64,000 nucleotides of DNA from Octopus sinensis (Eukaryota). The position numbers and the translations under genes are program-made. Below are positions 5,201-59,219 of the stretch, one piece after another (within the stretch, counting starts at the first letter, position 1; each line of letters begins with the position of its first letter). Below the pieces are notes generated by a model, which did not search any database, was not told where the DNA came from, and saw only the letters and a list, made by a program, of their open reading frames with translations. The DNA is taken from NCBI RefSeq assembly GCF_006345805.1, contig NW_021832595.1:45010-109009 (forward strand). The letters are read 5' to 3'.

Positions 5201-8035
5201 GGCCATGACTACAGTCTCACTTGTTTTGACAGGTCTGTACAAGCACGGTATCTTACCAAAGGTCTCGGTCACCTGTGACTGCTTCCATGTGACCCAATGC
5301 TCAAACGGTGCTTTTTGTGTGCCACTGGCATCAGCCATGACTATGGTTTGACAGGTCCTCACAAGCTCAGCATATCACCCAACATCTGAAGGGTGCTTTA
5401 TATGGGCCAGTTATGCTACAATGGCATTGGCCATTACTCCAATCTCACTTGGCTTGACAGGTCATCTCAAACATCACATATTGTCAAAGATCTTCGTCAC
5501 TGCCTCTGTCAGGTTCAAAGTATGAAGGTCATGCTTCACCACCTCATCCCATTTCTTCCTGGATCTACCTCTTCCACATGTTCCCTCCACTGTTAGGGTG
5601 TGACACTTCTTCATACAACTGTCCTCATCTACATGCATCACATGACCATACCAGTGCAGTCATCCCTCTTGCACACAACATCTGATGCCTCTTATCCCTA
5701 ACTTTTCTTTCAAGATGCTTACACTCTGTCAAACATACACACTGACATTGCACATCCAGTGAAGCATACTGGATTCATTTCTTTCAACCCTACATATGTC
5801 CTTGGCTCTCACAGCCCATGTTTCACTGCTATGTAGCGTAGCTGTTCGCACACAGGCATCATACAATCTTACTTTCACCTTTGGTTGCCAGCAGGGTCAG
5901 GAGCTCTCTGAATTTTGCCCTGCCATTTTTATTCTCACTGCTACACTCTCAGAGTATCCACCTCCACTGATGATTTGGTCACATAGATAACAGAAGCTAT
6001 CTACTACCTCTAGCTTAGACCTCTGGCATTTGATGGAGTCTCTTTTCTGTACATTTCTAGTGTTTATCGTACATGTGCCTACTCCACACACACAAACTTT
6101 TTTCCCTGTTAATCTTCCTTTGATATTGCTGCACCTTTTATGTGTCCATAGCTTACACCAGGTACATCTTACGGAGTTGCTACCTATGCCTTTTCTTCAG
6201 ATTGAGCAGGGATATTTGGAGGGATTTGTGATTTGTCTGCCTTACTGCTTTCAGTTTTGCCTGGTTAACTCTAAAGCCCTTCAATTCTAGACCTTCTTTC
6301 TATACTTAAATATATTAATTTATGATATATATTAACATATATTAGCATGTATTAAACAGAAACTTAAGAAAGCAAATATCTTTGCAGGTGGGTTTGAAAT
6401 TCAGGCGGAATCTAACAAAATTATGAATCAAAGAAGGAGTGAACTGAAAACTGGAGAAGTAGTGTCAACTAAAGCTGGTAAACTCAAATGCAAGACTATC
6501 ATTCATGCTGTTGGACCCGTTTGGAATAATGGACGAACCAATGAAATTTTTCACCTTTCAAGAGCTGTTCAAAATTGTTTGGCATTCCTTGAAGAAAAGT
6601 CTTATACATCAATTGCAATTCCTGCCATCAGTACAGGTAAGAATTTACCATTTTTATTCTGTTCAAATTATTTGGTATAGAAATAGTAATTACACTATTT
6701 AGTGTATAGCAAGGCAACTATCCTGTCCCTCTATTCTAACCTCTCCCCTGGCACCCATCCACTTCCCTTGGTTTCACTCCCCCTCTCAACTAAAAGCCTT
6801 TGTCTTGCAAGTAACTTGGCCATCCCACAGGTGCTTTTTACGTGACACCAGCTCCTGTGACGGTGTCACATAAAAAGCACCCAGTGCATTCTCTAAAGTG
6901 GTTGGCATTCTGTAAAGGAAGGGCATCCAGCCATAGAACCTATACCAAAAGAGAAAATTGGTGCCTGGGCAGCTCTCTGGCCTTGAAAACAGATGTGAAA
7001 TGATGATGATGATGATAATGACTGGTGTCCGTGTCGGTGAATGCCGCTTGACTGGCGTCCGTGTCCGTGACATGTAAAAGCACAAACTGATCGTGGCCGT
7101 TTGCCAGCCTCCTGTAGCTCCTGTGCTGGTGGCACCTAATAAACACCCACTACACTCACAGAGTGGTTGGCGTTAGGAAGGGCATCCAGCTGTAGAAACA
7201 CTGCCAAACCAGACTGGAGCATGGTGCAGCCTCCATGGCTTACCAGACCCCGGTCGAACCGTCCAACCCATGCCAGTATGGAAAACGGACGTTAATGATG
7301 ATGGGGATGATGATGATATATTATTGTAGGAGATGTGGCAGCATGGTTAAAAAGCTGATGTTCCACATGATTTCTGATTCAGTTCCCTGGCAAGTCTTTT
7401 ATTATAGACATGGGATGGCCAAAACCTTCTCAGTGGATTTGGTAGCCAGGAATTGAAAAGAGGCCTGTTGTGGCACAACTGACATTCTACAAGTACACTA
7501 TTTGTTGTTGTTGTGTGAGTGTGTGACAGTCCCGGCACCCAAGCAGACAATTCTTGTCTGCCAACACTAACAATATGAGTGCCTTTATGAACCATATGAG
7601 AGGTTCTCTCACAGTAAATAACATAGCATTTGGTGCTCAAACACAACATCCACATTTAGTTGGATATAAAAATTGCCTGTTGGTATTACTATTGCTTCTG
7701 TTGCTGTTAATTACCTTTTTCATAGGCTTGCTAGCTATTTGCAAAATCAGTGCCTTAACAGATACTGAAATTCTATACATGGTCAATAGATTTGGCTGTT
7801 ATGTCTCCACTAGATGTCTTCTACTGAAGAGTCCAGGCAGGATGAAATCATGTCATCGTAGCAGATGGTTCTCGTCTGTTAAAAATATAAATATGAGTAA
7901 TTTTATGCACCCAAGGCCCTGTGGGAGGTCCTCTTGAGGTAAATAATGCAGTTCTCTCTGTTCTAACATGACCTTTATGTTAAGTTGGATATAAAGATTG
8001 CTTTTCATATTAATACTGCTTGAGTCAACAATAAT

Positions 8036-14300: not shown

Positions 14301-17300
14301 TCTGAAGATCAGCAAAGGCATTCTGCTGGACATCAGATGGAGTCTCAAGACAGAAAGGAGATGAGACTTTCTGAAGATCAGCAAAGGCATTCTGCTGGAC
14401 ATCAGATGGAGTCTCAAGACAGAAAGGAGATGAGACTTTCTGAAGATCAGCAAAGGCATTCTGCTGGACATCAGATGGAGTCTCAAGACAGAAAGGAGAT
14501 GAGACTTTCTGAAGATCAGCAAAGGCATTCTGCTGGACATCAGATGGAGTCTCAAGACAGAAAGGAGATGAGACTTTCTGAAGATCAGCAAAGGCATTCT
14601 GCTGGACATCAGATGGAGTCTCAAGACAGAAAGGAGATGAGACTTTCTGAAGATCAGCAAAGGCATTCTGCTGGACATCAGATGGAGTCTCAAGACAGAA
14701 AGGAGATGAGACTTTCTGAAGATCAACAAAGGCATTCTGCTGGACATCAGATAGAGTCTCAAGACAGAAAGGAGATGAGACTTTCTGAAGATCAGCAAAG
14801 GCATTCTGCTGGACATCAGATGGAGTCTCAAGACAGAAGGAGATGAGACTTTCTGAAGATCAGCAAAGGCATTCTGCTGGACATCAGATGGAGTCTCAAG
14901 ACAGAAAGGAGATGAGACTTTCCCAAGATCAACAAAGGCATTCTGCTGGACATCAGATGGAGTCTCAAGACAGAAAGGAGATGAGACTTTCTGAAGATCA
15001 GCAAAGGCATTCTGCTGGACATCAGATGGAGTCTCAAGACAGAAAGGAGATGAGACTTTCTGAAGATCAGCAAAGGCATTCTGCTGGACATCAGATGGAG
15101 TCTCAAGACAGAAAGGAGATGAGACTTTCTGAAGATCAGCAAAGGCATTCTGCTGGACATCAGATGGAGTCTCAAGACAGAAAGGAGATGAGACTTTCTG
15201 AAGATCAGCAAAGGCATTCTGCTGGACATCAGATGGAGTCTCAAGACAGAAAGGAGATGAGACTTTCTGAAGATCAGCAAAGGCATTCTGCTGGACATCA
15301 GATGGAGTCTCAAGACAGAAAGGAGATGAGACTTTCTGAAGATCAGCAAAGGCATTCTGCTGGACATCAGATGGAGTCTCAAGACAGAAAGGAGATGAGA
15401 CTTTCTGAAGATCAGCAAAGGCATTCTGCTGGACATCAGATGGAGTCTCAAGACAGAAAGGAGATGAGACTTTCTGAAGATCAGCAAAGGCATTCTGCTG
15501 GACATCAGATGGAGTCTCAAGACAGAAACGAGATGAGACTTTCTGAAGATCAGCAAAGGCATTCTGCTGGACATCAGATGGAGTCTCAAGACAGAAAGGA
15601 GATGAGACTTTCTGAAGATCAGCAAAGGCATTCTGCTGGACATCAGATGGAGTCTCAAGACAGAAAGGAGATGAGACTTTCTGAAGATCAGCAAAGGCAT
15701 TCTGCTGGACATCAGATGGAGTCTCAAGACAGAAAGGAGATGAGACTTTCTGAAGATCAGCAAAGGCATTCTGCTGGACATCAGATGGAGTCTCAAGACA
15801 GAAAGGAGATGAGACTTTCTGAAGATCAGCAAAGGCATTCTGCTGGACATCAGATGGAGTCTCAAGACAGAAAGGAGATGAGACTTTCTGAAGATCAGCA
15901 AAGGCATTCTGCTGGACATCAGATGGAGTCTCAAGACAGAAAGGAGATGAGACTTTCTGAAGATCAGCAAAGGCATTCTGCTGGACATCAGATGGAGTCT
16001 CAAGACAGAAAGGAGATGAGACTTTCTGAAGATCAGCAAAGGCATTCTGCTGGACATCAGATGGAGTCTCAAGACAGAAAGGAGATGAGACTTTCTGAAG
16101 ATCAGCAAAGGCATTCTGCTGGACATCAGATGGAGTCTCAAGACAGAAAGGAGATGAGACTTTCTGAAGATCAGCAAAGGCATTCTGCTGGACATCAGAT
16201 GGAGTCTCAAGACAGAAAGGAGATGAAACTTTCTGAAGATCAGCGAAGGCATTCTGCTGGACATCAGATGGAGTCTCAAGACAGAAAGGAGATGAGACTT
16301 TCTGAAGATCAGCGAAGGCATTCTGCTGGACATCAGATGGAGTCTCAAGACAGAAGGAGATGAGACTTTCCCAAGATCAACAAAGGCATTCTGCTGGACA
16401 TCAGATGGAGTCTCAAGACAGAAAGGAGATGAGACTTTCCCAAGATCAACAAAGGCATTCTGCTGGACATCAGATGGAGTCTCAAGACAGAAAGGAGATG
16501 AGACTTTCTGAAGATCAGCAAAGGCATTCTGCTGGACATCAGATGGAGTCTCAAGACAGAAAGGAGATGAGACTTTCTGAAGATCAGCAAAGGCATTCTG
16601 CTGGACATCAGATGGAGTCTCAAGACAGAAAGGAGATGAGACTTTCTGAAGATCAGCAAAGGCATGCAGCAGCAGCACTTAATGCTGAATCATTAAAACG
16701 TTTAGCTCACCAGATTACGCAGAGGTTCAATAGAATAGCTCTCAGAATCAGGTCACATACAAATTCGCTCTTCACAACACCTGGAGATTCTTTCAGATAT
16801 GATCCATCGCATTCTTATAAAAATGATAATTCTGTCCAAATCGGTGACCTTTCTTGTCATTTGTGCAAAGCTTTTACATTAACTCCACAAATGTTTTGTC
16901 ATCAATGCAGCACTTTCATGTATCACCTGTTTCATATATATACAAACTATGCCCTTTTAATCCCGAGCAACACCGGGTATCTCTGCTAGTTATATATATT
17001 TTGAGTAAGAACATTTGTTGGATTAAATGTGTTGTATACTTTATTTATTACAGGTATTTTTGGTATACCCATAGAAGAAGGAACCAAATGTACAGTAAAG
17101 ACGATAAAGAATTATCTTGATACTCACACAAATTCTAAAATAAAACATATATGTTTGATTGATGTACGGAAGGAAGTAATCAGAGCTTTTAAGCTTCATC
17201 TAGAAATGGTGTTTGGAATCAGTAAAAGCAGAGGTAGGACTTGTTATTTGTTTGATATTTTAGTGAAAACTTAAATGATTTATTTCAGGTGTTAATTATG

Positions 17301-20300: not shown

Positions 20301-23300
20301 CTGAGTTCCTTTCAAGTGTTGGGCCCACAGAGGCAATGACTGAGACCTTTGGCATTATGTTGTGTTTGAGAATATGACCCATCATGCCGAGCAAAATTGC
20401 AGTCGTGGAAGATACTGGTGTTGCACAAAATGACACCCATGCCGGTGGCATGTAGAAGCACCCATTACACTCTCAGTGTGATTGACATTTGGAAAGACAT
20501 CAGCTGTAAGAACCATGCCAAATCTGACTGGAACCTGGTACAGCTTTCCAGCCTATCAGCTTCAGTCAAACCATCCAACCCATGTCAGCATGGAAAGTGG
20601 ATGTTAAATGACGATGATTATGATGATGATTTACATTTTAAACAAATCAAAATAGATGAACATCAATGGAATTTGTATCTTTGTGGTACCAGTGCTGGTG
20701 GCACACAAGAAAACCATCCGAACGTGGCTGTAGCCAGTACCGTATCGACTGGCCTCTGTGCTGTGGGCACGTAAAAAACACCATCCGATTGTGGCCGTTC
20801 GCCAGCCTCATCTGGCACCTGTGTCAGTGGCACATAAAAACACCATCCGAAGACCCGGCAAGACTAGTCAGGCCATAACCCGTGGCCCCTACCTGGGACG
20901 TAGTCAGTCTAGCTGTGCATACCTTCCTTCTTGTGACACTTGTGAAGACCTGTTGAGGCAAGTGAAAATCAAATCAAAAAATCAAAACAAATCAAAATAG
21001 ATGAACATCAATGGAATTTGTATCTTTGTGGTACTAGTGCCGGTGGCACACAAGAAAACCATCCGAACGTGGCCGTAGCCAGTACCGCATCGACTGGCCT
21101 CCATGCTGTGGGCACGTAACAAACACCATCCGATCGTGGCCGTTCACCAGCCTAATCTGGCACCTGTGTCGGTGGCACATAAAAACACCACCCGAGCGTG
21201 GCCGTTCGCCAGCCTCGTCTGGCACCTGTGTCGGTGGCACATAAAAACACCACCCGAGCGTGGCCGTTCGCCAGCCTCATCTGGCACCTGTGTCGGTGGC
21301 ACATAAAATCACCCACTACACTCTCGGAGTGGTTGGCGTTAGGAAGGGCATCCAGCTGTAGAAACACTGCCAGATCTGACTGGCCTGGTGCAGCCTTCGG
21401 GCTCCCCAGACCCCAGTTGAACCGTCCAACTCATGCTAGCATGGAAAGCGGACGTTAAATGATGATGATGATGATTCTTTAAGAGAGAAATTTCTTGAAA
21501 TAAGTGTTTTATCTTCTTACGTCCAATAATGTTGAACCAAGAGTTATAGCGTTGTCTGACTCTGAAGTATTTACGAGAGGCCATTTAGCTCTGGAAGCCT
21601 TCTTCAACTGAATAACCAAGTTTCTTTCCTTGAACAGCTTAACCTGTTAGAAATTACTTATCACATGACCATCAGCCTGAGTCATGTGATGTGGTAAGCA
21701 GGTAAATTGTGTGAAGCAGACAACACTGCCATATGAGTGAGATATACATCATCATCGTTTAACGTCCGTTTTCCGTGCTAGCACGGGTTGGACAGTTCGA
21801 CCGGGGTCTGGGAAGCCAGGGGCTGCACCAGGCTCCAGTCTGATCTGGTGAAAGAAAAATTACAAGAAAGGTTTTAAAATGTACCATATATACATACATA
21901 TATATATATATATACATATATATATGTATATATATGTGTGTGTATATATATATATATATCCTTGATTAAAGTTTAAAGATTATATGTTTATTTTGGACTT
22001 CTGGTCACACATATGCAATAATATACAGCAACTGGTCTGAGTATTACCTGTACCATACCCATACATGTATGTCCCAACAGATTTCTTTCCCTATAGTTTC
22101 AAGAAAAACATAATTTTTTAATGAAATTTTCTATAAATAAGCTTCAGATGGTATAAATTCCAATTCTATTGGAACATGTTGTAAAAAACAACAAAAAAAC
22201 CCCACTCAAAAACAAATATCTGATGTGTATCAATATTTATGTATGCTATCCCAGCAATTTATATTTTTGCATCAAATTCCATTATTATCCTAATATACAC
22301 ACCTTGAAAGATATTTGTGGAAATTTTCCTTTAAAAATAGCCATTTTCCCAAAAGTTATGAGGAAACGAATTTGAGTTTATGTGAATTTTCTGAAAAACC
22401 TCTCTCCACTCCCTCAAAAACATTTTTTCACACCAAATTCCCAACTTAGTGGAATCTACACCATCTGAAGCCTGTTTTAATAAATGTTTTAAGCAAAAAC
22501 GTTTCATAAGAGGTGGAAGATCACATTTTACTAACCAGTTTCACTGTTTTCAGACTTTGAAAGTTTCAAGTATGTTCTTCAATGTATTTTTAGTCCATTT
22601 GGTAGAAGAAATAGATGGAAATAACGTTATATAGCCTTGTTGCTATATAAAAGGTGTGTGTGTGTGGGGGGGGGGGGGGAGAATGACTACAAGTTAGCAT
22701 GTATTCTCTTGCTAAATCATATTTTCAGAAAGGAATACCATTACTATTTATATGGAATAAAGTAGTTCTTTTAAGAGAGAGAGAAGAATGTTCAATTGTT
22801 TATTTTCAGGAACCACATCATTCAACGCATCCCTTCTTGGTCCACAACAGAAAGCAGCCCCTATGACACCCAGAACTAATGTGGCATCCGGAGAAAATGC
22901 TGGCATCAAAATACAACTAATGATTGGTTCAATTTCTAATGCATCTGTGAGTAAATAGATTCACTTAACATATTTATATTTAATTGTTATTTCATTTGCA
23001 AATGAGGAATCATTTCCAGTTAATTAAAACATTTTCTCAATCAAACTCAAACATTTTATTTCCTTCACATCTGATATCTTGAGTATATCTTTTGCTAACT
23101 TTAACAACCGCAGACTTACTACAGCCATTCTGTAGAGCCTTACTTAACAACAATATCAACTGCAACAATGTATCTCTCTTCTCCACGGAATGTTCCTTAG
23201 CTGTTTACCATTAATTACTTTTGTAGGTTGATGTCATCGTTAACAGCACCAATAAAAACCTCCTGCTTAATAATGGTTCTATCTCCAATTTATTCTCAAT

Positions 23301-26193
23301 GCTGCTGGTCCCCAGATACAAAGCGAATGTAGCCAGAAATATCCTCAAGGTATTTCTACTTCTGAAGTAGCCATAACTAAAGGATATAACCTCAAATGTA
23401 AGAATGTTTTTCATCTGGCATTACCGCCCTGGGGTGTAAACTCCTCACATTCAGTAAGTATTATTCATATGTATTTGATTTATTGAAACAGTTAATGTTT
23501 GAAGAGAACCTTATGCATGTTGTGTGAGAATCATAAAGCAAATGTCAGCATCCTGTTTAATATTTGTTCTTCCAAGTTATCATTGGAAGGAAGCAGAAGA
23601 TATCGATGAACAGGACACTTTTATATATAAATAGAAGGAAAAAAGCCTCATGGCCTAACAACAGTTATGTGACTGATAAATAAGACTATATTCAAACATA
23701 TTTCTGTGTTTTACTGTCTGTATTGGTGAGTTTTTCTCTGTCATGGCACGAGCACTAGAGAGGTAGTCATGTCCTCAACAACACCAAAGACTCCTCTTGG
23801 GTCTGCATTGTCTCTCTTCATTCACCTATCATTTTACACGGTGGATTGGGTCTGTTTTATTGTAGCAGCATCATGAGTGAGGTTGCCTTGTCCCTTGCAG
23901 GACTAAAGAGTGATAGGAATGACAGTTGTGTTTAGCAGTGGCAGGAGTGAGAGGAGTTGTGAGAGGAGGATATATTTATTACAACTTAATGGTTTCTTCC
24001 TGTAATAAGAAAATAATTTAATAAAATGTTCATTATCAATTACTAAACAATTATTTTTTTTAGACTCTGGCAAACTTGACTCAAATAATAACCATTTGTC
24101 TGGGGAAAGCTGAGAGAAGAGGAGCAAAAAGCCTTGCATTTCCTATATTAGGGGCTGGAAAATTGAGGTACCCCATTGAAAACCTACCCAGAACTATGTA
24201 TGAAGCAGTGAAAAACTACTCAAAGCAAAATTCAAGCCAGATCAAAGTTGTAAACTTTGTGGTTTATCCTCAAGACACAGAAATAGTAAAGGTTGGTTGA
24301 TGTATTTGTTGTTTGTTGTTTTATGTTGATATTCTTGGAATTCACCAAAACAAAGAAAATATTCTGCAATAAACAAAGGAAATCGAAATGAAAATAAAAC
24401 TTAGAATCATGCTCGTTATTTATCACCTGTTTTCCATGCTGGCATGGGTTGGACAGTTTGACAGGAACTGGCTAGGCAAAGAGCCAAACCTGGTTCCATT
24501 CTTTGTTTTGGTATGGATTCTGCAGTTGAGATACCCTTCCTAACATCAACCAATTTACAGAGTGTACTGGGTGCTTTTTACGTGGCACCAGCACCGACAG
24601 AATTACCAATTATCTTGCAAGACAAGAACCCCTCAACTGGACGGGAGTGGGGGGAATGGTACTGGTCGGCTGTGGCTTTGCGCCAGTTGAAAGACTTAGG
24701 GTATACTGGGGACAGAGAGAGGTATCTTGCTGTAGAGTAGTTACATGAATGCCCCAGTTGGAAGGAAAAGGAAAGAAGGGGTCAGATAGTAAGATAAAAA
24801 GAGTGATAGTGAGAGATATGATGGTGGAGATGTGATGGGACATGCCCTCGAGGGAGATGGGGTGGTGAGGATAGGTAAGGGGATATAGAGGCTTCAGCTG
24901 GGTGAGGGGGGCAGGATGAGATGATTGTAACAAATGATGCAGTGAAATATAGAAATGGCTTGTGGGGTTGCAGTAGATATATGTGGGTATTGAGGGCAAT
25001 AGTAGATAAGCAAGGAGTTGATGATGGAGAGCAGCAGAGGGAGAAGAGAGAAGGTGCAGAAAGGAGGTGGGGTTAGTATGTGCCTATTCTGCTCTCAGGT
25101 AATAGAGGAAATGGTGGATGTTAGGAAATGAAATGTGTGTGTATGGAATGGGAGAGAAGGTTGACATGGCAGCGCCCCTCATGGACAAACATTATCGTTA
25201 TTTGGATATCAATTCTGTTCTGGTGGGCATGTCTTCTTAAGTACAGCCATGTACCATATATCTCATCCCTTTGTCATCTCCTTCATAAGGCTCACTGTTT
25301 TGAGATTGGCCTTCAATTCTTCATCCCATGTCTTCCTGGGGTCTCCCCCTTCCATAGCTTCCAACAACATCAAATTCCAACTTGATATTTTTCGAATTAA
25401 CCCAAAACATATTCTGTAATTAATGAAGGAAATGATTATGAAGATAAAATATGGAATCAGTTTTGTAAATTTATTTATTGGTGTCTTAGAATTCTTCAGT
25501 TGGAATGTTGGAATCTTTGATGTGTCTCATGGCCCTGTCTTCCATACTTATAGGTTAGCTTGGTTTTCTTCAACTCTTCCATTCCATGATTTAATTCTTT
25601 GTAACTTGATATGGATTCAGTGTAGCTATGCTGTGCCTTAACTTGCTAGTAATGGCAACCAAGTGTCCCTTGCTCTCATTTAAATTGGATGAGTTTTAAG
25701 GGTGTTCAACAGGATACTTTCTGCTATTTGTTTCAGCCCTTGGCATTCTGAGTTCAAATCCTACTAATGCTGTATTAACCTTTTATCGCTTCACAATTGA
25801 TAAAAATCTCCCAATCTTGATGGCTGGATTGGTGGAACTGGAAGAATGACATTTCTTCTGTGGTATTTGTTTCAGTACTTGGCATTCTGAGTTCAAATCC
25901 TGCCATGGCGTTGCCGGAGTGTTAACTTAAACCATCCTTTGGTTTCACACCAACCCTCGGCACCTTGGCTATGTTTACTGGAATTCCCTTTGTCACAAGC
26001 ATTTCAGCGACGTGTCTGGTTTGAGGAAATTTAAGATTTCAGCAAAGAAGGAAGGGGAAATGTTTTAACTTAGTCTGAATCTAACAAAAGACTTGCTTGC
26101 TGTTTGAATTGGTCAGTGACTGAGTGAATTCAGCTGAAGATTTTTATGATGTCAACAAGTAATGTTCACAAGTATTGAAGAGAGTGATAGAGG

Positions 26194-38200: not shown

Positions 38201-41200
38201 AATATAGCCAAGGGAAATAACCCATTCATGTTCATAAGTTATTTGGTATAAATCAAATTGAGTATGCTTATTTCTTAGTATTTGAACTATTTGAGTTATT
38301 TTCACAATTTATCCAGTACAATGCTTAAACAAGTAAATAGTATTTACCTAAACAATAGATCCACCTATTTCGGTTAGTGACTTATTCATGAATTTAACAA
38401 CACTAGCGCCACTGAGGGTAATATTCTCTGTGAATGCACAAAAGCTTTTTTCAGAGTTATTCACTTTGAAGTGTTATTATCTCATATCTGATTAGCCTGT
38501 TATTACATAACATGCTTCACAATTTTAGTATACATAACTTATTAGTATTTCCTAATAAGTTCTATAAACTCTGGGAACATATTAACCCCTTACCCAACAA
38601 TTATTTTGAAAATGAATGTATTTTTTCAGACATATTTTTTAATTGTTTTATTTTACTATGTTTTGAATGGTGATTTCGAGGTATATTTCAAACCTTATTT
38701 ATTATGAATTTTAATTCAATAATATTGATTTTAAATTACCGCTTTGGGCAGAAACGAGTTAACCTGTTTTTTTCATAAATCATATTACTTTTACAAAAAA
38801 TCATGTTATTTTATTTGGTTATCTTATTTTCCAAATTTAGAATGAATGATCAAAACATGATTGTTTACTTCTGTTGATTTTATTACTTCAAAACTTAGTA
38901 ATGACAAAAAAGAGAGACAAAATAATGAATTATCATCATCAGAGCTCGACATGGTGGGGTTATAATATAAAGGTATAAAAAAAAACAACGTAAAAACAAA
39001 GTGAATACTTCTATTCATAAAATGTGCCTTCCAACCCTTCAACTGTCTCCAGGTGACTAAATCATACTCGGTCTTCAATGCCTTACTCAAGCGAAAGGTG
39101 GCAGAAATCGTCACTGCCAGAGGTATAAAGTGAGTGAATATACTCGTATTTGTCAAAAAAGAGTTTATAATAGACAAAGGAACTCGTTTGCTGTCGATTT
39201 TGGCGAGTCTATCTTTTGACGAGTTAACTTGCCAGAGATAGAAAAAAACGATTTCGGTCAAAACGCATATATTCGTTTCTGCCGGGTAAGGGGTTAAAGC
39301 CCTTTTCGGAGCTACTTTATTTGAATTCTTACTATTGGGTAATTAATTTCATGTTATTATATAACTGACTTCACAATTTGGGTATTCATAACTTATTAGG
39401 AATTCTTAAAAACAAGATCCTGTGTAAATACACAAAAACCGTTTTAAGGGCCACATACTTTGTATTGTTGTTACTGGATTAGTGAAACAATTATGAGAAT
39501 GAAACCAAGGAATAAGCCCTGCTTTCCTGGGAATTACTGGGTACATCAGATAGTAATTAATTGCCAGAAGGTCTATTAAAAATAATAACGATAGAAGCAG
39601 TATTAATACCAAAATATAATATTTATGCCTTTCCACTGTAACAAAAAAATGAAGGAAATTTCTGTCCACTGTAGAATTGTTTGAGAACCTTTTTCTCTTT
39701 GAATCTTTTCTCTTTTCTTTGTTATGAAGGACCACGGTCTGAATTGTCAGGTTTCCTCTCATTCTTCCTTACAATGTAAAAATAATTACCTTGTACTCCT
39801 GTTTGTTCCTGAAATAGCTTTGGACAAACAGGATGTAACAAAAACGCCTCAAATTCAACATTCTTGATAGACATTTTGACTGCAAACACAAGGTTCAACG
39901 GTTCTAACCATGATGGTAACTGGATAGAAAAAAAAACAGTAGAACTTCAGCTACATGAAGACACCATTACCACATGTTTAACTTCACTAACACCATGTTG
40001 GTGGCCATGTAAAGCATGGGAGGTTTTTCTGCTCTATTCACTGTATTACCATATTGACACAGGTCTCATGTCTCCCAAAAGGCAGGAAGGCCATGGATAG
40101 AATATCTTTGATCTGAGTGACAAAGTAATTTTCCTCATTTCCTTATTACAGAGTAGAAATAAATCATTAAATATTTCAAATATTTTGTTTTTATTAAATT
40201 AAATCTCTTCTCTTTGCAAAAATGGGAAAATAAAAATATAAATTGATTCTTTTTTGTTTTAACAGGAATTTGATGAATATCTCCGAAACAGAGGTAAAAC
40301 ATTTGTTTGTTAATATTGAATATTACGGTGTCTTGTCATGTCATTCTATGTTAAACATTACTGATAATTACTATTTTGGTTTTATTTCTGCAAGGAATTA
40401 TGTTGATAGCAAGTTACTACCTGCAGCCTCAGGTAGCCACAAGTTTTTAGCAGTCTTTCAAGTGCTTACAACCCTCCTGATAATCCTTGCTGTACCTAAA
40501 AGACAAACTTTCTGTAGAAGCTCTTCCGGGTATTCTATTTCAATATCCTTCAGCCATTTGTCTATATTTTGGCTTCCTGTTCCCAACACACCAATTATTA
40601 TAGGCACCACCTTTACTGTTTGCATGCTCCAAATTCTTCCTATTTCAAATTTTAAGGGATTGTATTTACTTTGTTTTTCTTCTTCTTTACGATCCTGGAA
40701 TCAAACAGACATGATGGGTCGATAAGTAAGCAGCTTCTCTTTTCCTTATCTATGACTGTAATATCTAGTCTATTGTTTTCTAACTTTTTCTCCATTTGAA
40801 TAGGAAAGTCCCATAAAATCTTACATTTCTCCAACTCCAATTCTCTTTTGACTCAATGATTGTGCTTTGTGTTTCCAGCTTCAAATCCCCATTTCTGGCA
40901 CAGTTTCCAGTGTAAAACTTTTACAACCTGGTCGTGCCTCCGTTTCTTATATTCTTCCTGTGCCAACTTGGGGCATTCTTCCACGATGTGTGCCATTGAC
41001 TCATTCTAAGTTCCACAGGCTCTACATTTTTCTGACACATTCTCTCCATATATATTTTTACTCAAGTTGTTTGTTTTTATCGCTTGATCTTGGACTGTTA
41101 CAATTAGGCTCTCTGTTTCTTTTTTTAATTGGCCCCTTTTTAACCAAGCCCAGGATTTTGTTCCACAATATGTCTTTAGTGACTCTCCAGAATTGGCCAT

Positions 41201-44200: not shown

Positions 44201-47200
44201 ATGGCAAATATCTGTATGGAGTGGGGCAAGTGAGAGTTAGATGAGGTTTGGGTAGGAGGGAGTGACAAGTAGCAACGTAGGAGTAGCAGAGGAGAGCAGC
44301 AGAATCATAAATTCATAGACAAGGAAGTGCAGAGATGATGCACAGGATGTGACAGTGGAAGGGATGGGTTGATGATGATGATCAACTGGGACAGAGATGG
44401 GAGTTAGAGATACATGAGGATGGCTATAGTGAGTGGGGAGACAAAATTGGAGGGAGTATTGATAACGGATGTGAGAGGGCGTTGGGAATAAATGCATATA
44501 GGAGAAGTGTTAAACATCAAGAATGGCAAACTAAGATGTAGCTAAGAGTGGGAAGGGAAAGATTAGGGAAGGGGCAAAAAGGGATGATCGATGGAAGGTT
44601 GTACGAACGGAGATGATGATGATGATGAAAGAGAGGCAACTGGTATTAATGAAAAGGGGTGAGAAGTGTTGTGCAGATTCTGCTCTCAAATGCTTACAGC
44701 AACAAAGTAGGGCCATAGTTAGAAGTGTAATGGAGGGATGGGTGTTAGGAAAATGAGATGTGGTGAAGGGTATGGTTGACATGGGCAAATGTCAGTGTAG
44801 GGCCCAACATGGACAGGAATAAGCACAATGCATTTAGGACCTCACTTTTGCTATGATGGATGTGTCTTTATATGTCATTTTGTTCAACTTGCATCAGTAG
44901 GTGTGTGGCCAGGTGGAAAACTGCACCAGACTTCTGTACATGCCAAAACAGACATAGAGGTCTGGTGCCATCTTCTACCTGGCAAGTTCCTGTCAAATGA
45001 TCCAACCCATGCCAGCATGGAAGGTAGATGTTGAACGATGATGATGGTCATAATGATGACACACTGATATTTGTTTATTTCCAGAAACTAAATTATCAAG
45101 CCCATCCTTTCCTGGTCCACAACAGAAAACAGTCTCTATCATACCCAGACCTTATATGACATCCGGAGAAAATGCTGGCATTAAAATAAACTTAATGATT
45201 GGTTCAATTTCTAATGTATCTGTGAGTAAATAGATTCACGTAACATATTTATATTTAATTGTTATTTCATTTCCAAATGAGGAATCATTACAGTTAATTA
45301 AAACATTTTCTCAATCTAACTCAAACATTTCATTTCCTTCACATCTGATATCTTGAGTATATCTTTTGCTAACTTTAACAACCTCAAACTTGCTACAGCC
45401 ATTCTGTAGAGCGTTTCTTAACAACAATATCAACTGCAACAATGTATCTCTCTTCTCTCCATGAAATGTTCCTTAGTTGTTTACCATTAATTACTTTTGT
45501 AGGTTGATGTCATCGTTAACAGCACCAATGAACACCTCCAGCTTGACAGTGGTTCTATCTCCAAATTTATTCTCAATGCTGCTGGTCCACAGATACAAGC
45601 TGAATGTAACCGGAAATATCCTCAAGGTATTTCTACATCTAAAATAGCCATCACTGAAGGATATAACCTCAACTGTGAGAATGTAATTCATCTGGCATTA
45701 CCTCCCTGGGATGAAAATTCATCTGATTCAGTAAGTATCAATCATATTATATTGATTTATTGAAAGAGTTGTTGTACAACCCTAGGTTATCATTGATCCA
45801 GCATCTCTGTGGCATGAACGGAATTGTCCATAAAACTATGCACAATCCACAGATGTGTTTTTCCAGTCATACAACACTTCCGTCTGCTTCAAGACAGAAG
45901 CATGTACTTTGATGTCCAGTGATGTACAGTTTGGGCTACAGTGTGACAGTCTGGTGTTGTGGTATTCTGTACAATTTCCAAAGCATGGATTCTGGTTGTT
46001 TGAAATTGATGTAGACTCTATTGTAGATATTCCCTGAACATTTCGACTCAACCATAGTCTCTTGTGTGCAGTGTAGAGTCTTTTGTGCCTGTGGCGCCCT
46101 GCCTTGTGGGTGGTTTTGTTGCTTCTTGCAGTATGTTCTCACCCAGATTTCCCTCTTGTAAATAATAATTAATCTCTCCTCTTCCCTATTATTTTTTTGT
46201 TAATTACAAAATTCCACCTGAATTACACTGTGCAACCACCAAATCTTGGAACATTTCTCTTTCCATTCACGGCATCCATATCTTCACTCAGACCAGACTT
46301 CCTGCTATCACATGATCTGTGTTGATCCTTCTGTCACATGATCCATGTTAATCCAATGACCACATGATCTGTTAATCCAATAATCACTAGAAGTTGTTTA
46401 ATGTTATTTGAATCTGTAAAACATTTCTGTTTGAAACAACAAATTCCATGTGCAATGTGTTGATCAAAGAATATATTCATCACTTACATTATTTACATTT
46501 GATGGATATTTGTCCTCATCTTGTTTGTTGTTAACACAACGTTTCGGCTGATATACCCTCCGGCCTTCATCAGGTGTCTTGGGGAAATTTTGAACCTGCG
46601 TTCTTATTCCTAAGGTATTTTTCAATGTTAATATTATTATTATTATTATTATTATATTATTATTATTATTATTATTATTGTTCAGGTCACTGCTTGGAAT
46701 CAAACTCGGAATCTTAGGGTTAGTAGTCCATGGGCATATGGCATAGTGGTTAAGAGTGCAGGCTATTAACACCAAAATTCTCAGTTCGATTCCAAGCAGT
46801 GACCTGAACAACAACAACAACGATGACAACACCACTACCACCACCAACAACAACAATAATAATTATAATAGTAATAATAACAACAACATCGAAAAATACT
46901 TTAGGAATGAGAACCCAGGTTTGAAATTTCCCCAAGAAACCTAATGAAAGCTGGAGGGTATATCAGCCGAAACGTTGTTAACAACAAACAAAATGAGGAC
47001 AAATATCTGTCAAATGTTAATAATGTACATAATTCCTCCTCTCTTAAATATAGAACTGAAAGAATATTTTCATTACAACTTAATGATTTCTTCCTGTAAT
47101 AAGAAAATAATTTAATAAAATGTGAATTATCAATTACTAAACAATTATTTTTTCAGATATTGCGAAACTTGACTAGCATGGTAGACACTTGTCTAGGAAC

Positions 47201-50200
47201 TGCTTCATGTCTTAGTGCAAAAAGCCTTGCATTTCCTATATTAGGAGCTGGAGTATTGAAATATCCCATTGAAAAACTACCTGGAACTATGTATGAAGCA
47301 GTCAAAGAGTCACCTCGAAAATACGATATCAAAGATGTTTACTTTGTTGTTTTCCCTAAAGACACAGAAATAGTAAAGGTTGGTTGACGTATTTGTTGTG
47401 CATTGTATCATGTTCCTCCTCCTCCTCATCATCATCATCATCACCATCATCATCATCATTATCACCATCACCACCACCACCACCACCATCGTCATCATCA
47501 TTTACTGGGGAGCTGCACCAGATTCCAATCTGATTTGGCATGGTTTCTATGGCTGGATTCCCTTCCTAACACCAACCACTCCAAGTGTGTAGTAGTGCTT
47601 TTTACGTGCCATTGGCATGGGTGCTAGCTACACAATACTGGCATCAACCACATCTATGAGCCCACTTGGTTTGACAGGTCTTCTTAAGCATGCTATATTA
47701 CCAAAGCTCTCAGTCACTTGTCACTGTCTCTGTGAGGCCTAACTATGATTTCACTTGGCTTGATGAGGCATTTCAAACACAGCATATCGCCAAAGGTCTT
47801 GGTTACCTCTGTGAGGCTCAATGTTCTATGGTCATACTTCACCACCTCATCCCATGTCTTCCTGGGTCTGTCTCTTTCACAGGTTCCCTCCACTATTAGA
47901 GTGTGTGGCACTTCTTCACACAGCTGTCCTTGTCCATGTGTATCCCATGACCATACCAGCACAGTCGTATCTCTTGCACACCACATCTGATGCTTCTTAT
48001 GGTTAAGTTTTTTTCTCAAGATGTTTACACTCTGCCATGTATGCACACTGACATTGCACATCTAGCAAAGCATACTGGCTTCATTTCTCTCAAGCCTACA
48101 CATGTCCTTGGCTGTTATAGCCCATGTAGCATGGCTGTTCACACACAGGCTTCATAAATCTGCCTTTCACTGAGAGAGGCCCTTTGTTGCTTGCAGGGGT
48201 AAGGGCTCTCTGAACTTAGCCCAGCCTATTCGTATTCTCACGGCTATGCTCTCAGAGCTTCCACTCCCACTACCGACCTGGTCACCTAAGTAATGGATGT
48301 TATCAGCTACTTCTAGTTTACCCCGCTGGAATTTAACTCTACCTGTGATTCTGCCAGACACAAAAAACTGATTTTCCTGTTAAACTTCCTCTGATATTGA
48401 TGCACCTCTTATGTGCCCCACAACGTGCATTGGGTACATTTTATGGAGTTTTTACCTACACCGTTTCTATAGATTGAGCAGAACCTGAAGGGGTTTGTGA
48501 TTTGTCTGCTCTTCTACATGCTAAGACTTGGGTTCTTGCTAAAATCCTCTAAGGCCTTTGATTCAAGACTTTGCTCCCACACTTAAAATTTCTTCTCTAG
48601 TTCAGGTAGTGATTCAGCTATATGAAGAATGTCATCGGTATAGAGAAACTCCCAGGGGCAGCCCATTTTAAATTCCTCTGTTATTGCCTGGAGGTCTATG
48701 ATGAACAAGAGGGAGCTGAGGACTGATCATTAGTGAACTCCTACTTTTACCCTGAATTCTTGGCTATACTTGTTTCTAACCTTCACCTTACCTATAGCAT
48801 CCATGTACATGTCTTGTACAGCACTCACCAACCACTCATCTATCTTTAGCTTCTGCATTGACCACCAGATAAGGGAGTGGGGGACCCTGTCAAAGGCTTT
48901 CTCCATGTCAACAAAAGCCAGATACAGGGGTTTATCTTTGGCTTTCTATTTCTCCTAAATTGCCTAACTATGAATATAGCATCAGTTGTGCTCTTGCCTG
49001 ACACAAATCCAAACTGTATCTCATCAGATTGTGTCGTATAGCCAGCTGGAGACAATATCTCCTGGGACTAAATTACAGTAACATTAGTCCTAAACCAGGA
49101 CTGACTACGAAATCCATACTTGTTGCAAAGTGTCCAATGGACAAGCCTGGCTATATTGTCATGGTGTCTCATATATTTCTTCTGGGCTAGTGGTGTACAT
49201 TGGCTAGTAATATGCCATATGGTTTCACCGTTTTGTCCACAGATTCTGCACTTATCACTTTTTGCTGTGTTGTCTATTCTGTATTTTATGTAGTTTGTTC
49301 TTAGTGCTTGCTCTTGGGCAGCACAGATTAGTGTCTCTGTTTTTGGTTTTAAATCACTTTTAGTCATCCACAGCCATCATTTTTCTCTGTCTGTCTTATC
49401 TTCAACATCCCTATGAAATTGACCATGCATTTTACTTTTTAACCCACCTATTTTCAGTTTCATTCATTTTCAATTTTTTGTATAGTGCTTTATCTTTGCA
49501 ATCTTTCATCCTACACAAGCCTGACCTTCTTACTTCTAATAATAGCAGTTCCATAGCATTGTTTACATACCATGCTATGTTGTTTTCTTCTGCTCTAATG
49601 CTGTGCTCGCATCCAATAAGTCCTCTTCCCCCTCTTTTTCTTGCTACATACAGTCTGTCTGTGTCACTTTTTTGCATGGAGTGCCCCATATCTAGTTAGC
49701 AACTTCCTTGTCTCTCTGTCTAAGCTGTTTAGTTCGTCTACTGTCCATGCGATTACTCCTGCTCCATATCTAAGGAGTGAAACTGCCCAGGTGTTGATAG
49801 CTGCAATCTTATTCTGTCCATTTAATTTCGACTTAAGGATCAGACTCAGTCTGTGCAAGTACTCCTCCCTAAATTTTTCTGTCATTTCTTTTTCCATCAA
49901 TTTATCCATTTCCAAAATACCCAAGAACTTATAGCCCGTCTCTTCTATCTGCTTCATAACATCCCCTGATGGTATCGATAGCTCGTCCATACATTTGATT
50001 TTGCCTCACCTCAAGACTAACACACCACACTTTCTCAATCTGAACTCCATTCTGATATCAGCACTGAAATATACACCCTATCAACAAGGGAACTGACTTA
50101 GGCTTCATCTTTACCATAAAATTTGAGGTCATCCATGAATAACAAATGGTCGACATTTTGTTGGCGGCTTTTGGATACATACCCAGCCTTTGCTTTCCTA

Positions 50201-53200
50201 AGAATCAGTGTTAGTGGTATCAAGCACAGTACAAATATCAGTGGGGACAAGCAGTCCCCTTGGAAGATGCCCCTCCTAATTTCTACTGACCCTAAACTTC
50301 TTCTGTATGCTGTCAGGTCCATCCTCCAATTCGTCATACTTTCTCCAAACAATCGCTCAACATTCGATGCAATACCAAATAGGTTCATACACTCCATAAT
50401 CCAAGAATGTGGGATCATATCGTACGCCTTATGATATGGCTAAGTTACTTTTCCTCCTCTTGCAGTCTCTGAGCACAGTTTTATCTATCAGGAGTTGATC
50501 CTTGGTACCTCTGCACTTACGCTTGCAACCCTTCTGCTCATGTGGCAGGACTCCATTTTTTGCCAGATGTTCATACATTGACTCTGCGAGTATTCCAGTC
50601 AATAATTCCCACATAAGTGGCAAACAGGATATCAGCCTGTAATTGTCTACTGTATTGCCTTTTTCAATGTTTTTCAGGCACAGCACTGTCCTACCAAATG
50701 TCAACCACTCTGGTATTACTTTGTCAGCATTTGACCAAGTGTTGAGTTGCGCAACTATTCGGGCATGACATTCACCAAAACTTTTGTTCCAGTAGATTTA
50801 AACCCCATCTGGTCCCGGTGCTTTCCAGTTGCTAATTTTTTTGCTGATTTCTTTCATTTCCCTAACTGAAATGACTAGTTCTGCCTATTTTGGACAGACT
50901 ACTGTTTGTTTCAGTTCTTGCAGCCATTCAGCATCCTTCTTGCGCTCCTTGTCTTTGCTCCAGATGTCACCCGAAAACCTTTCACTTTAAATGTTATTTG
51001 GTCACGCTACAAGAAAAAGAAGATAATTTTGAACAACTGCTTCAAAATCTCCAGCTTCTATTTCAGGATTACAAATTTACATCAAGCCAAAGTATTTCAA
51101 CACAAATATTCTTCTTTTGTTTTAATTAGTTTTGAAAATAACGAAGAATAAAGTAAATTAGCTTTGTCATTATTGAGCTGGTGTTTGGACACAACATGGA
51201 ATCTTGATACCAAATTCAATTCCGTGAATAATTTTTTACAGTCACTTAAACAAGCAAATTTCATTTCTTTTATTCTGTAAGTAAAAATTCCTCCCCAAAC
51301 TACAGAATATTCAAAAGCCTGTCCATCATAGGAAGTTATTCTATGATACAATAAATGGAAATATTAATTTAAAACAATATTTGTGATAGAAACAATGAGT
51401 TAAAACATTGCATTGTAATTAGCAGAAATTAATTATTTTCTCATTGAGTAATGATAAATTATTTGCTTACTTTTAACAGAAATTTAAAGAATATTTCCAA
51501 CAAATGTCAGCAGATGGCTCAGCTGTAACATCAGGTAAATTGTTTCTTTTTTCTTATATTAAATATCATTTAGGAAGAAACTAGGGACAGTTTTTCTGAT
51601 CACCATCATCATCATCATCATCATCATCATCATTATTATTGAGTTAGAGAGGAGCACATGCCATCAAATTGACATTGGGGTACAAATATATGAAGCCCAA
51701 TAAATGGTATTAGTTTTTGATTCACCCTCGTATGTTTTTAAACATTTTGAATTTGACATGTTTTGTACTCAACAATAACAACAAATCCAAAGAACAACAC
51801 CTCTAAAATTATATTTAAAAAATAGGCAAATAAAGAAAAAAAGAGATATTTGTAGTTAAAAAAAAAGATTTTTGAGAAGAAATCAAAGAAATCATCAGCA
51901 TCGTTTAACATCTGGCATAGGTTGTGTCAGGACACAGAAAGGGTCTCAATTAAAATGCTAATAGTGAGAATAACAACAACTTCTAAATACGGACAAGTTT
52001 TGGTCTGAGAATGGGAAAAATTGTGTCACAAGTGATTTTGTTTCCTTATGAGAAAAACTTATTCAGGAGTGGTGGGCAAGGTAGAAGATAGTGTACCTCT
52101 ACCTTACAAAAAGGAAAGGGCTTTCTGCATGCCCTTAAAACAATGACTAAAAGAGGCATTAGCCAATGTATGAAACAACATTTTATTCATTGACCAGAAG
52201 AAAGCTTATGCTGCCATTTGCCTGACCTTCAAGACCAATGGTGAGACATGAGAGCAGGTAGAAAGAGGGCAAAAAACATTCACTCATGGGCCCTTAATGC
52301 ATTGCATTGTCAAATGGGACACAAAAGCGACAGCAATGACAGCATCAACAGTGACCTTGATCCCTCGTCTGTTGTCACCTTTATAGGGTTAGTAGAGAGT
52401 GCAAAGGTAACCTTACTCAGGAAGGGTCAGTATAAATTTATAAATCCTAATGGGCCATGAAAACCTCAAGTCCATTCTAAGGCCATGACCCATGATGTGT
52501 TCAGAACACAAAGCAATAATTCTACTGCTGGAAGGCTGAGCCTCATGTCACGCTTAACCGTAAAGACTACAATAATTAACTGTGACAACTTAAAACTAAT
52601 TACCCAAATGATGTGGGGTACAACATGTCACATACAACCTTAGAAATACTTGTGGGTGCCTTTGGATGCACCAAGTTTCCAGAAGAGATGTGACAAGGAG
52701 ACACAGTACAGACAAGAGAAACATATAAGGAGAATCCACCACCACCACCACCACCACCCTCACACCCCAGATTCACTCAATTGAAGTTCACAGTTCTTTG
52801 TGAAACAAAAGAAGAACTGATGGAGCCATCATGTGCACCAAAAGAAGACAAAATTAAGCATCCGCAAGTTGAATGAAGAGGAGATGGACTCTGCTCTGAT
52901 TTTGTGCAACACCCATACAAGAGAACACTAGCAAAAGAATCACATGAGCTATCCATGAACCACTAATGTGCAATTTTGTAGAGGATGTGGAATATTTCAT
53001 CCTTGGGATAATAGTAAATTTGTCCAGTTGTACCTTTGAATATATGTTTCTTTACTACCCGCAAGGGGCTAAACACAGAGAGGACAAACAAGGACAGACA
53101 AATGGTTTAAGTCGATTACATCGACCCCAGTGCGTAACTGGTACTTAATTTATCAACCCCGAAAGGATGACAGGCAAAGTTGACCTCGGCTGAATTTGAA

Positions 53201-59155: not shown

Positions 59156-59219
59156 GACACCAGCTTGTTCATTTACAAAATCAAATGAATTTTTGTAGAA
59201 AGCAAAATTTGTAATTCAA

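What the first reader, a model, noticed from the sequence alone, without database searches (positions are those of the whole stretch)
22810..23453. Duplicated exons diverge 3-4 times faster than the intron between them: accelerated protein evolution
Manual count versus 45085-45730: D-E intron 12 substitutions plus 3 small indels in ~280 bp (~4%). Exon D has 24 substitutions in 137 bp (~17%), with 19 amino-acid changes versus 3 silent codons. Exon E has 28 in 228 bp (~12%), with 17 amino-acid changes versus 8 silent codons. F/F' is also heavily replaced, while ligand-loop motifs ([20 protein letters not shown]) are kept. Established: primate macro-PARPs (PARP9/14/15) evolve under recurrent positive selection linked to host-virus conflict. 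Inference: a similar arms-race signature in a cephalopod.
Basis: partly seen in the sequence, partly recalled or inferred. Interest (0 to 1): 0.7.

Follow-up and report, generated by a model that had tools for sequence, protein, structure and literature searches.

The report
Octopus macro-domain cassettes: similar introns, diverged exons
Two repeated macro-domain exon sets in an octopus PARP14-like gene do differ far more in their exons than in their introns. The main cause appears to be DNA exchange between gene copies that keeps the introns alike, with signs of selection for variety in the exons, and not a simple burst of fast protein evolution.

Summary
It breaks [12 protein letters not shown] and gives a TAG at 23368-23370.

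The two blocks are macro-domain cassettes (exons D-E-F) of one + strand PARP14-like gene. The same contrast holds in seven more cassettes from O. vulgaris, O. sinensis and O. bimaculoides. Both cassette introns differ by about 2-5% among the window, O. vulgaris and O. sinensis cassettes. Exons differ by 8-30%, and flanks do not align.

Synonymous sites are as inflated as replacement sites (window pair pS 0.21, pN 0.165, omega 0.74). So the intron is not a neutral clock for these exons. Exchange between cassettes is strongly supported (PHI p<=0.002; a mapped breakpoint inside the D-E intron, p=0.0005). The most diverged stretch, the 5' half of exon D, is a disordered linker. Its sequence types are old.

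A family-wide codon test still finds a class with omega about 2.7 (LRT 25.3; 0 of 114 null simulations with recombination reach it).

This looks like a new member of a known kind.

The parts
6342..6650 (+). Upstream macro-domain exon ('macro A') of the same gene
   Evidence: Pfam PF01661, 79 bits. 87% identical to the N-termini of O. vulgaris P0008 and P0011.
17050..17232 (+). Second exon of macro A (183 nt)
   Evidence: tblastn with P0011 residues 71-131, 82% identity.
22796..24327 (+). Cassette 1 homology block. It runs from 14 nt upstream of exon D to 36 nt downstream of exon F. Alignment with other family cassettes ends sharply at both edges.
   Evidence: Sliding diversity and per-region distances. 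blastn against loci L001-L006.
22810..22946 (+). Exon D1 (137 nt, enters in phase 1). The 5' 81 nt encode a disordered linker. The 3' 56 nt encode the first strand of the macro domain.
   Evidence: pLDDT is below 50 for residues 1-29 of the copy 2 model.
22947..23226 (+). D-E intron of copy 1 (280 nt). It is 4.7% diverged from copy 2 and 1.4-6.8% diverged among the eight cassettes other than O. bimaculoides L003.
23227..23453 (+). Exon E1 (227 nt). It carries a 1-nt deletion in the A run at 23287-23288, and the shifted frame ends at TAG 23368-23370.
   Evidence: Translations. Nine-cassette alignment.
23454..24063 (+). E-F intron of copy 1. Its middle part is 3-4% diverged from L001, L005 and L006, and it is replaced by unrelated sequence in copy 2 and in L002.
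24064..24291 (+). Exon F1 (228 nt, intact)
40266..40293 (+). Linker exon (28 nt, EFDEYLRNR plus 1 nt) that would join F1 to D2 in frame
   Evidence: tblastn and direct reading of the splice sites. The same join is seen in P0010.
45085..45221 (+). Exon D2 (137 nt)
45222..45502 (+). D-E intron of copy 2 (281 nt)
45503..45730 (+). Exon E2 (228 nt, intact)
45776..47060 (+). Middle of the E-F intron of copy 2. It is unrelated to the same part of copy 1 and contains repeat copies that match 28676-28913.
47157..47378 (+). Exon F2 (222 nt, two 3-nt deletions). It is the most divergent F exon in the family, 21-24% from all others.
51480..51534 (+). Second linker exon (55 nt, [18 protein letters not shown] plus 1 nt)
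56881..57159 (+). C-terminal exon region shared with O. sinensis P0007. Boundaries are approximate.
   Evidence: tblastn, 61-82% identity. No Pfam family.

Best explanation
The two blocks are two macro-domain cassettes (exons D, E and F) inside one octopus PARP14-like gene. They belong to a family of such cassettes found in several octopus genomes.

The cassettes exchange sequence by gene conversion or unequal crossing-over within a sharply bounded block of about 1.5 kb. This exchange keeps both cassette introns nearly the same in all copies. The exons do not get homogenised. They keep old, different sequence types, so synonymous and replacement sites are both 3-4 times more diverged than the introns.

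The likely reason is selection for variety in the macro domain, because a class of codons shows omega above 1. So the intron is younger than the exons around it. It is not a neutral clock for them.

What is shown:
- the gene structure
- the family-wide contrast between introns and exons
- the mosaic structure
- one mapped exchange breakpoint
- the site-class signal

What is inferred:
- that selection protects the exons from homogenisation
- that the targets are viral or other ADP-ribose-related factors
For: Gene and family:
- Both cassettes are Macro domains (Pfam PF01661, 76 and 77 bits).
- Their closest solved relative is human PARP14 macro domain 2, by sequence and by fold (TM 0.67-0.73).
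- Linker exons place both cassettes in one reading frame.

Family-wide contrast:
- Nine cassettes have mean intron p 0.048, pS 0.129 and pN 0.134.
- Both introns are 3-4% diverged among W_c1, L001, L005 and L006, while exons are 9-20% diverged and flanks do not align.
- In the window pair, synonymous sites exceed the intron 4.5-fold (Fisher p=7e-7).

Exchange between cassettes:
- PHI p is 0.0005-0.002, and 47% of informative site pairs fail the four-gamete test.
- O. sinensis cassette L004a is a chimera. Exon D and the first ~60 nt of the intron match W_c1. The rest matches its neighbour L004b. The breakpoint lies inside the D-E intron (max-chi2 51.9, p=0.0005).
- Multi-nucleotide motif states such as KVVNF and KDVYF are shared in a patchwork.

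Old exon types:
- The linker differs by 12-32% between types. It differs by only 4.9% in the pairs W_c1/L004a and L005/L006.

Introns look unconstrained:
- The middle of the E-F intron is replaced in two intact cassettes.
- For W_c1/L004a, the intron (4.7%), exon D (3.6-4.9%) and the nearest 400 nt of flank (about 5%) diverge alike.

Selection:
- M2a vs M1a LRT is 25.3.
- The result survives removal of the window copies.
- Null simulations do not reach it.
Against: - The introns of the window, O. sinensis and O. vulgaris cassettes are intermixed and do not cluster by species. The homogenisation may therefore be older than these species, or partly due to constraint.
- The D-E intron is never interrupted in nine cassettes and is very even in length. 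Some constraint on it cannot be excluded.
- Only 8-9 cassettes were sampled, and only two of them come from the window's genome.
- The codon models are my own implementation, with branch lengths fixed from M0.
- Wrong trees inflate the LRT to 33-41. The simulations cover only one form of recombination.
- Which residues face the ligand was judged from alignment and predicted secondary structure, not from coordinates.
Confidence: 0.55

Rival explanations
1. A recent duplication was followed by accelerated amino-acid change under positive selection, and the intron shows the true, young age of the copies.
For: - Exons are 2.6-3.7 times more diverged than the intron.
- There is a family-wide site class with omega above 1.
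- Copy 2's private changes are 25 replacement to 5 silent. Its replacement rate exceeds its private intron rate (p=0.005).
Against: - Synonymous sites are just as inflated, and pairwise omega is 0.74 (0.57 in the core).
- Flanks outside the 1.5-kb block do not align, so the duplicates are not young.
- Linker types are shared across species and differ by only 4.9% between orthologs.
- There are clear mosaics.
- Changes that look private may come from paralogs of the window's genome that were not sampled.
Confidence: 0.12
2. The cassette introns, above all the D-E intron, are held constant by purifying selection on an intronic element, such as a splicing control element, an RNA or an enhancer. 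The exons simply evolve at a near-neutral rate.
For: - The D-E intron is 265-291 nt long and uninterrupted in all nine cassettes.
- Its central part has a diversity of 0.015-0.03.
- An antisense ORF of about 53 codons is intact in most copies.
Against: - No Rfam match.
- No fold better than shuffled sequence, with z of -1.1 and -0.7.
- The antisense ORF has no Pfam family and no clear third-position bias (3/7/9 variable sites).
- The E-F intron is just as conserved, yet it is replaced in two intact cassettes.
- In the orthologous pair, the intron diverges like the neighbouring pseudo-exon and the near flank.
- An exchange breakpoint lies inside the intron.
Confidence: 0.15
3. Relaxed constraint. 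One or both cassettes are decaying pseudo-exons, and the replacement changes are neutral.
For: - Frameshift in E1.
- The O. sinensis counterpart L004a has a stop and two frameshifts.
- Family omega is near 1.
Against: - Neutral exons cannot exceed a neutral intron 3-fold.
- Copy 1's private changes are 9 silent to 10 replacement, which looks like purifying selection. The frameshift is therefore very recent or an assembly error.
- M2a beats M1a.
- All splice sites and the other exons of copy 1 are intact.
Confidence: 0.08
4. An exon-targeted mutation process raises the substitution rate in exons at both silent and replacement sites. This has been proposed for some venom gene families.
For: Both pS and pN are about 3 times the intron divergence. 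This is what a mutational cause would give.
Against: - No difference in substitution spectrum between exons and intron. Transitions and transversions are about 1:1 in both, with no A-to-G excess and almost no CpG.
- Orthologous exon D diverges like the intron.
- The mosaic patterns explain the data without it.
Confidence: 0.05

Closest known systems
Human PARP14 macro domain 2, and the primate macro-PARPs PARP9, PARP14 and PARP15, which evolve under recurrent positive selection (Daugherty et al. 2014, PMC4038475)
   Same: - Macro fold. It is the best match by sequence (3Q71, 3VFQ) and by structure (5O2D, 3Q71).
- The loop motifs are conserved.
- A codon class with omega above 1 is present.
   Different: - The octopus family proteins on record are short (114-311 aa) and carry only PF01661.
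- No PARP catalytic or WWE domain was seen.
- Here the variety lies among many paralogous cassettes that exchange sequence. In primates it lies among orthologs of one gene.
MHC multigene families, in which recombination homogenises some segments while selection keeps antigen-binding exons diverse (for example badger MHC class I, PMC3434948)
   Same: - Different histories for neighbouring segments.
- Breakpoints in introns.
- Homogenised parts lie next to diverse, positively selected exons.
- Types are shared across species.
   Different: - Octopus is an invertebrate and the domain is intracellular.
- No allelic data are available.
- All three exons, including a disordered linker, stay diverse.
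- The ligand or target is unknown.
Snake venom toxin genes: 'accelerated evolution' and ASSET. Intron segments are more than 85% similar while exon segments are switched (PMC2711939, which cites Nakashima et al. 1993 and 1995).
   Same: - Introns are much more alike than coding exons.
- Replacement and silent rates are similar.
- Exons show segment-wise patchwork.
   Different: - The product is not secreted and is not a toxin.
- Here a recombination origin of the patchwork is shown statistically.

Membership tests
Macro domain (Pfam PF01661) | Profile match above the curated cut-off | tested here: met
   Copy 2 scores 75.6 bits and copy 1 (with X at the frameshift) 77.1 bits, against a cut-off of 22.
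Macro domain (Pfam PF01661) | Macro fold | tested here: met
   AlphaFold2 model with pTM 0.74. The core (blocks of residues 31-150 and 161-190) has block-mean pLDDT of 76-97. Foldseek top hits are PARP14 macro 2, with E 1e-13 and TM 0.67-0.73.
Macro domain (Pfam PF01661) | ADP-ribose binding or hydrolysis | not testable with these tools
   Loop motifs ([16 protein letters not shown]) are conserved in the alignments.
Macro-PARP (PARP9/14/15 type) | ADP-ribosyltransferase (PARP catalytic) domain in the same protein | tested here: inconclusive
   All 12 octopus family proteins carry PF01661 only. The C-terminal exon in the window has no Pfam family. The window may not hold the whole gene, and not every ORF was scanned.
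Multigene family under diversifying selection with homogenised non-coding parts (MHC-like or venom-like) | Introns less diverged than the adjoining exons, including at silent sites | tested here: met
   Intron 0.048, pS 0.129-0.156, pN 0.132-0.134. Both introns show it.
Multigene family under diversifying selection with homogenised non-coding parts (MHC-like or venom-like) | Recombination or gene conversion among members | tested here: met
   PHI p<=0.002. Breakpoint in the L004a chimera, p=0.0005.
Multigene family under diversifying selection with homogenised non-coding parts (MHC-like or venom-like) | A codon class with omega above 1 | tested here: met
   M2a vs M1a LRT 25.3. 0 of 114 null simulations reach it. 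LRT is 17-32 without the window copies. This is my own implementation, so it should be repeated with PAML or HyPhy.
Multigene family under diversifying selection with homogenised non-coding parts (MHC-like or venom-like) | Selected sites lie on the ligand- or target-binding surface | tested here: inconclusive
   Sites with posterior above 0.9, placed on the model's secondary structure:
- Loop 1: residue 56.
- The helix after loop 1: residues 67 and 70.
- Loop 2: residue 154.
- Also residues 78, 104 and 113, the 132-140 helix and the 172-180 loop.
No coordinates were available to measure distances.
Pairwise 'accelerated evolution' (dN/dS above 1 between the two window copies) | dN/dS above 1 over the domain | tested here: not met
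   Omega is 0.74 overall and 0.57 in the folded core. It is 4.5 only in the 27-codon linker, on 1.5 silent differences. This is not robustly significant: Fisher p is 0.03 or 0.13, depending on rounding.

The most novel reading that the evidence does not exclude
Octopuses may keep a diversified repertoire of stand-alone and tandem macro-domain cassettes as an innate antiviral recognition or erasing system for ADP-ribose marks. New variants would arise by cassette-level gene conversion under diversifying selection. Each cassette plus its linker is an in-frame module (621 nt), so variants might also arise by optional inclusion of cassettes in the mRNA. This would be an invertebrate, intracellular analogue of diversified immune receptor families.
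Probability: 0.2. Interest if true: 0.75.

Novelty: new member of a known kind. Interest (0 to 1): 0.5.

Why it matters
Little is known about how cephalopods fight viruses. In vertebrates, macro-domain PARPs are among the fastest-evolving antiviral genes.

This family of exchangeable macro-domain cassettes shows signs of selection for variety. That would point to ADP-ribose signalling as a field of host-virus conflict in molluscs too. It would also give a compact system (1.5-kb cassettes) for studying how gene conversion and selection together shape a repertoire.

There is a methodological lesson as well. In families that exchange sequence, an intron is not a safe neutral yardstick for the exons beside it.

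Tried and rejected
- **Conversion tract limited to this pair.** I first suspected one centred on the D-E intron. I dropped this because the intron is equally similar in all nine cassettes.
- **D-E intron as a uniquely constrained element.** I then thought this because the E-F intron showed a mean diversity of 0.21. That figure was an artefact of one cassette (L002) whose intron is replaced. Without L002, the E-F intron is as similar as the D-E intron.
- **Structured RNA in the intron.** No Rfam match. Folding z-scores are -1.1 and -0.7.
- **Antisense coding exon in the intron.** The ORF is present, but it has no Pfam family and no clear codon-position bias.
- **RNA-editing-like or methylation-like mutation signature in the exons.** None was found.
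- **Star and random trees as a robustness check.** They raise the LRT. They therefore show inflation, not robustness, and I replaced them with null simulations. The first simulation attempt timed out, and one search did nothing.
- **Loci that could not be fetched.** P0008 and P0002 (gene range too long) and P0012 (not on record). Nakashima et al. 1993 is not held.
- **Species of the window.** It could not be fixed. The syntenic O. vulgaris locus differs by 3.6-10.6% outside the cassette.
Full report
**1. The observation**

blastn of the window against itself finds the pair 22796-23493 vs 45071-45770 at 89.3% identity over 702 nt. From the splice sites and the reading frames I placed the exons as follows:
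- Copy 1: exon D1 22810-22946, intron 22947-23226, exon E1 23227-23453.
- Copy 2: exon D2 45085-45221, intron 45222-45502, exon E2 45503-45730.

A MAFFT alignment gives these counts:

| Region | Mismatches | Divergence |
|---|---|---|
| Exon D | 24/137 | 17.5% |
| Intron | 13/279, plus 3 gap columns | 4.7% |
| Exon E | 28/227 | 12.3% |

The exon vs intron difference has Fisher p=5.7e-5.

The contrast repeats beside exon F. The last 93 nt of the E-F intron are 93.5% identical. Exon F (F1 24064-24291, F2 47157-47378) differs by 24%.

**2.

E1 is 227 nt, not 228. One A is missing from the run at 23287-23288. The other eight cassettes compared all have AAA there. Read from its splice acceptor, E1 goes out of frame inside [12 protein letters not shown] and stops at TAG 23368-23370.

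Every other feature of copy 1 is intact: D1, F1 and all six splice sites. Copy 1's private substitutions are 9 silent to 10 replacement, which looks like purifying selection. So the lesion is either very recent or an assembly error. I cannot tell which without reads.

**3. What the thing is**

A protein search with copy 2's D+E+F translation finds 12 octopus proteins at 65-75% identity, from O. sinensis, O. vulgaris and O. bimaculoides. The sources name them 'PARP14-like', and all carry only the Macro domain.

Both window cassettes pass Pfam PF01661. The closest solved structures are those of human PARP14 macro domain 2, by sequence and by predicted fold (pTM 0.74, TM 0.67-0.73).

Mapping the family proteins onto the window gives one + strand gene:
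- macro A exons at 6342-6650 and 17050-17232
- cassette 1 (D1, E1, F1)
- a 28-nt linker exon at 40266-40293
- cassette 2 (D2, E2, F2)
- a 55-nt linker exon at 51480-51534
- a C-terminal exon near 56881-57159

A cassette plus its linker is 621 nt and runs from phase 1 to phase 1. It could therefore be skipped in frame. That last point is an inference.

**4. The contrast is family-wide**

I fetched genomic loci for six family proteins. Together with the two window copies, they gave nine D-intron-E cassettes.

Homology between paralogs is confined to a sharply bounded block, from 14 nt upstream of exon D to 36 nt downstream of exon F. Outside it, paralogs do not align.

Inside the block:
- The D-E intron differs by 1.4-6.8% among the window, O. 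vulgaris and O. sinensis cassettes. It differs by 6-11% from the O. bimaculoides cassette.
- The middle of the E-F intron differs by 3-4% among W_c1, L001, L005 and L006.
- The exons differ by 8-17% (E), 7-24% (F) and 12-32% (5' half of D).

**5. Why the intron is not a neutral clock here**

Nei-Gojobori counts give these values:

| Comparison | pS | pN | Omega |
|---|---|---|---|
| Family, D+E+F | 0.156 | 0.132 | 0.82 |
| Window pair, all | 0.213 | 0.165 | 0.74 |
| Window pair, folded core | 0.240 | 0.148 | 0.57 |
| Window pair, 27-codon linker | 0.072 (1.5 differences) | 0.274 | 4.5 |

Silent sites exceed the intron 4.5-fold (p=7e-7). Positive selection on amino acids cannot do that.

The substitution spectrum is the same in exons and intron. 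A special mutation process is therefore not indicated.

**6. Evidence for exchange between cassettes**

- The PHI test gives p=0.0005-0.002, and 47% of informative site pairs fail the four-gamete test.
- One event can be read directly. O. sinensis cassette L004a shares its upstream flank, exon D and the first ~60 nt of the intron with window copy 1 (3.6-4.9% divergence). From window-equivalent position 22998-23016 onward it follows its tandem neighbour L004b, with exon E at 4.0% against 12.4% from copy 1. Max-chi2 is 51.9, p=0.0005.
- Multi-nucleotide motif states in exon F are shared in a patchwork across cassettes and species.
- In O. vulgaris, exon D is tandemly duplicated at the syntenic locus. 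This is another trace of unequal exchange.

**7. Age of the exon types**

It encodes a segment that the structure model leaves disordered (pLDDT below 50 for residues 1-29). Its types differ by 12-32%, but the orthologous pair W_c1/L004a differs by 4.9%, the same as its intron at 4.7%. Copy 2's type ([14 protein letters not shown]) recurs in P0010.

The divergence between D1 and D2 is therefore old. It is not fast.

**8. Are the introns constrained instead?**

The evidence is mostly against this:
- No Rfam match.
- No fold better than shuffled sequence.
- The antisense ORF in the intron has no family and no clear codon bias.
- The middle of the E-F intron is replaced in two intact cassettes, copy 2 and L002.
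- For the orthologous pair, the intron, pseudo-exon D and the nearest 400 nt of flank all diverge by about 5%.

Against my view, the D-E intron is never interrupted in nine cassettes. Also, the introns do not cluster by species among the window, O. sinensis and O. vulgaris. I keep this rival at 0.15.

**9. Is there positive selection at all?**

I wrote a Goldman-Yang codon likelihood with separate neighbour-joining trees for the three exons.
- M0 omega is 1.50 for D, 0.94 for E and 0.62 for F.
- M2a beats M1a with LRT 25.3 (p=3e-6), with about 30% of codons at omega about 2.7.
- Exon E alone gives LRT 18.9.

Wrong trees inflate the statistic to 33-41. I therefore simulated the null model with tip labels reshuffled every 8 or 3 codons. 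Of 114 replicates, none reaches 25.3; the maximum is 11.7. Dropping copy 1, copy 2 or both leaves LRT 17-32.

Sites with posterior above 0.95 include residues before and after binding loop 1, one residue in the diphosphate loop (GAG-x), and surface helices and loops.

It does not rest on the exon/intron contrast.

**10. Conclusion**

The best reading is that gene conversion homogenises the cassette introns, while selection for variety keeps the exons different. This pattern is known from MHC genes (PMC3434948) and resembles the conserved introns and switched exon segments of snake venom genes (PMC2711939). The background claim about primate macro-PARPs is correct (PMC4038475). A full-text search found three papers that mention both PARP14 and octopus. 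Judged by their titles and abstracts, the two that were listed are not about this family.

I rate this as a new member of a known kind, of moderate interest.

Noticed in passing
window 13645-16665: A 69-nt tandem repeat with 43.8 copies and 96% matches. The period is 23 codons. Long ORFs are open on both strands, and one + frame reads [23 protein letters not shown] per unit. It lies in the intron between the two macro A exons. It has no match in the syntenic O. vulgaris locus L001.
   Followed up: partly
L001 45901-46026 and 46198-46305: In O. vulgaris, exon D is tandemly duplicated about 270 nt apart. The window's D1 aligns to the first copy through its upstream flank and to the second copy through its downstream side.
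   Followed up: partly
L004 4862-5560: O. sinensis cassette L004a lies upstream of the annotated gene. It has an in-frame stop in exon D and two 1-nt deletions in exon E, and no exon F was found for it. By its flank and exon D it is the counterpart of window copy 1.
   Followed up: partly
window 45776-47060 and 28676-28913: The E-F intron of copy 2 holds two inverted copies of a repeat that also occurs at 28676-28913. They replace the sequence present in copy 1 and in most other cassettes.
   Followed up: no
window 16987-17757: This 770-nt stretch around exon 17050-17232 differs from O. vulgaris L001 by only 3.6%. Other syntenic non-coding stretches differ by about 9-11%. So introns near this other exon of the gene are also unusually similar.
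   Followed up: no
window 22663-22682; 30422-30992; 31709-31977 and 37451-37935: A run of about 20 G lies 130 nt upstream of exon D1. There is a (CACCAC)n-type array of 570 nt. Two arrays of the same 29-nt repeat lie 5.5 kb apart.
   Followed up: no
window 5000-6300, 18000-20200, 32000-34200, 47700-49000, 55500-56000, 58000-61600: Many copies of one or more dispersed repeat families, 70-80% identical and in both orientations, fill the long introns. A 279-aa ORF lies at 63088-63927 on the - strand. By my blastp of six-frame segments, its translation matches another stretch at 49071-49376.
   Followed up: no
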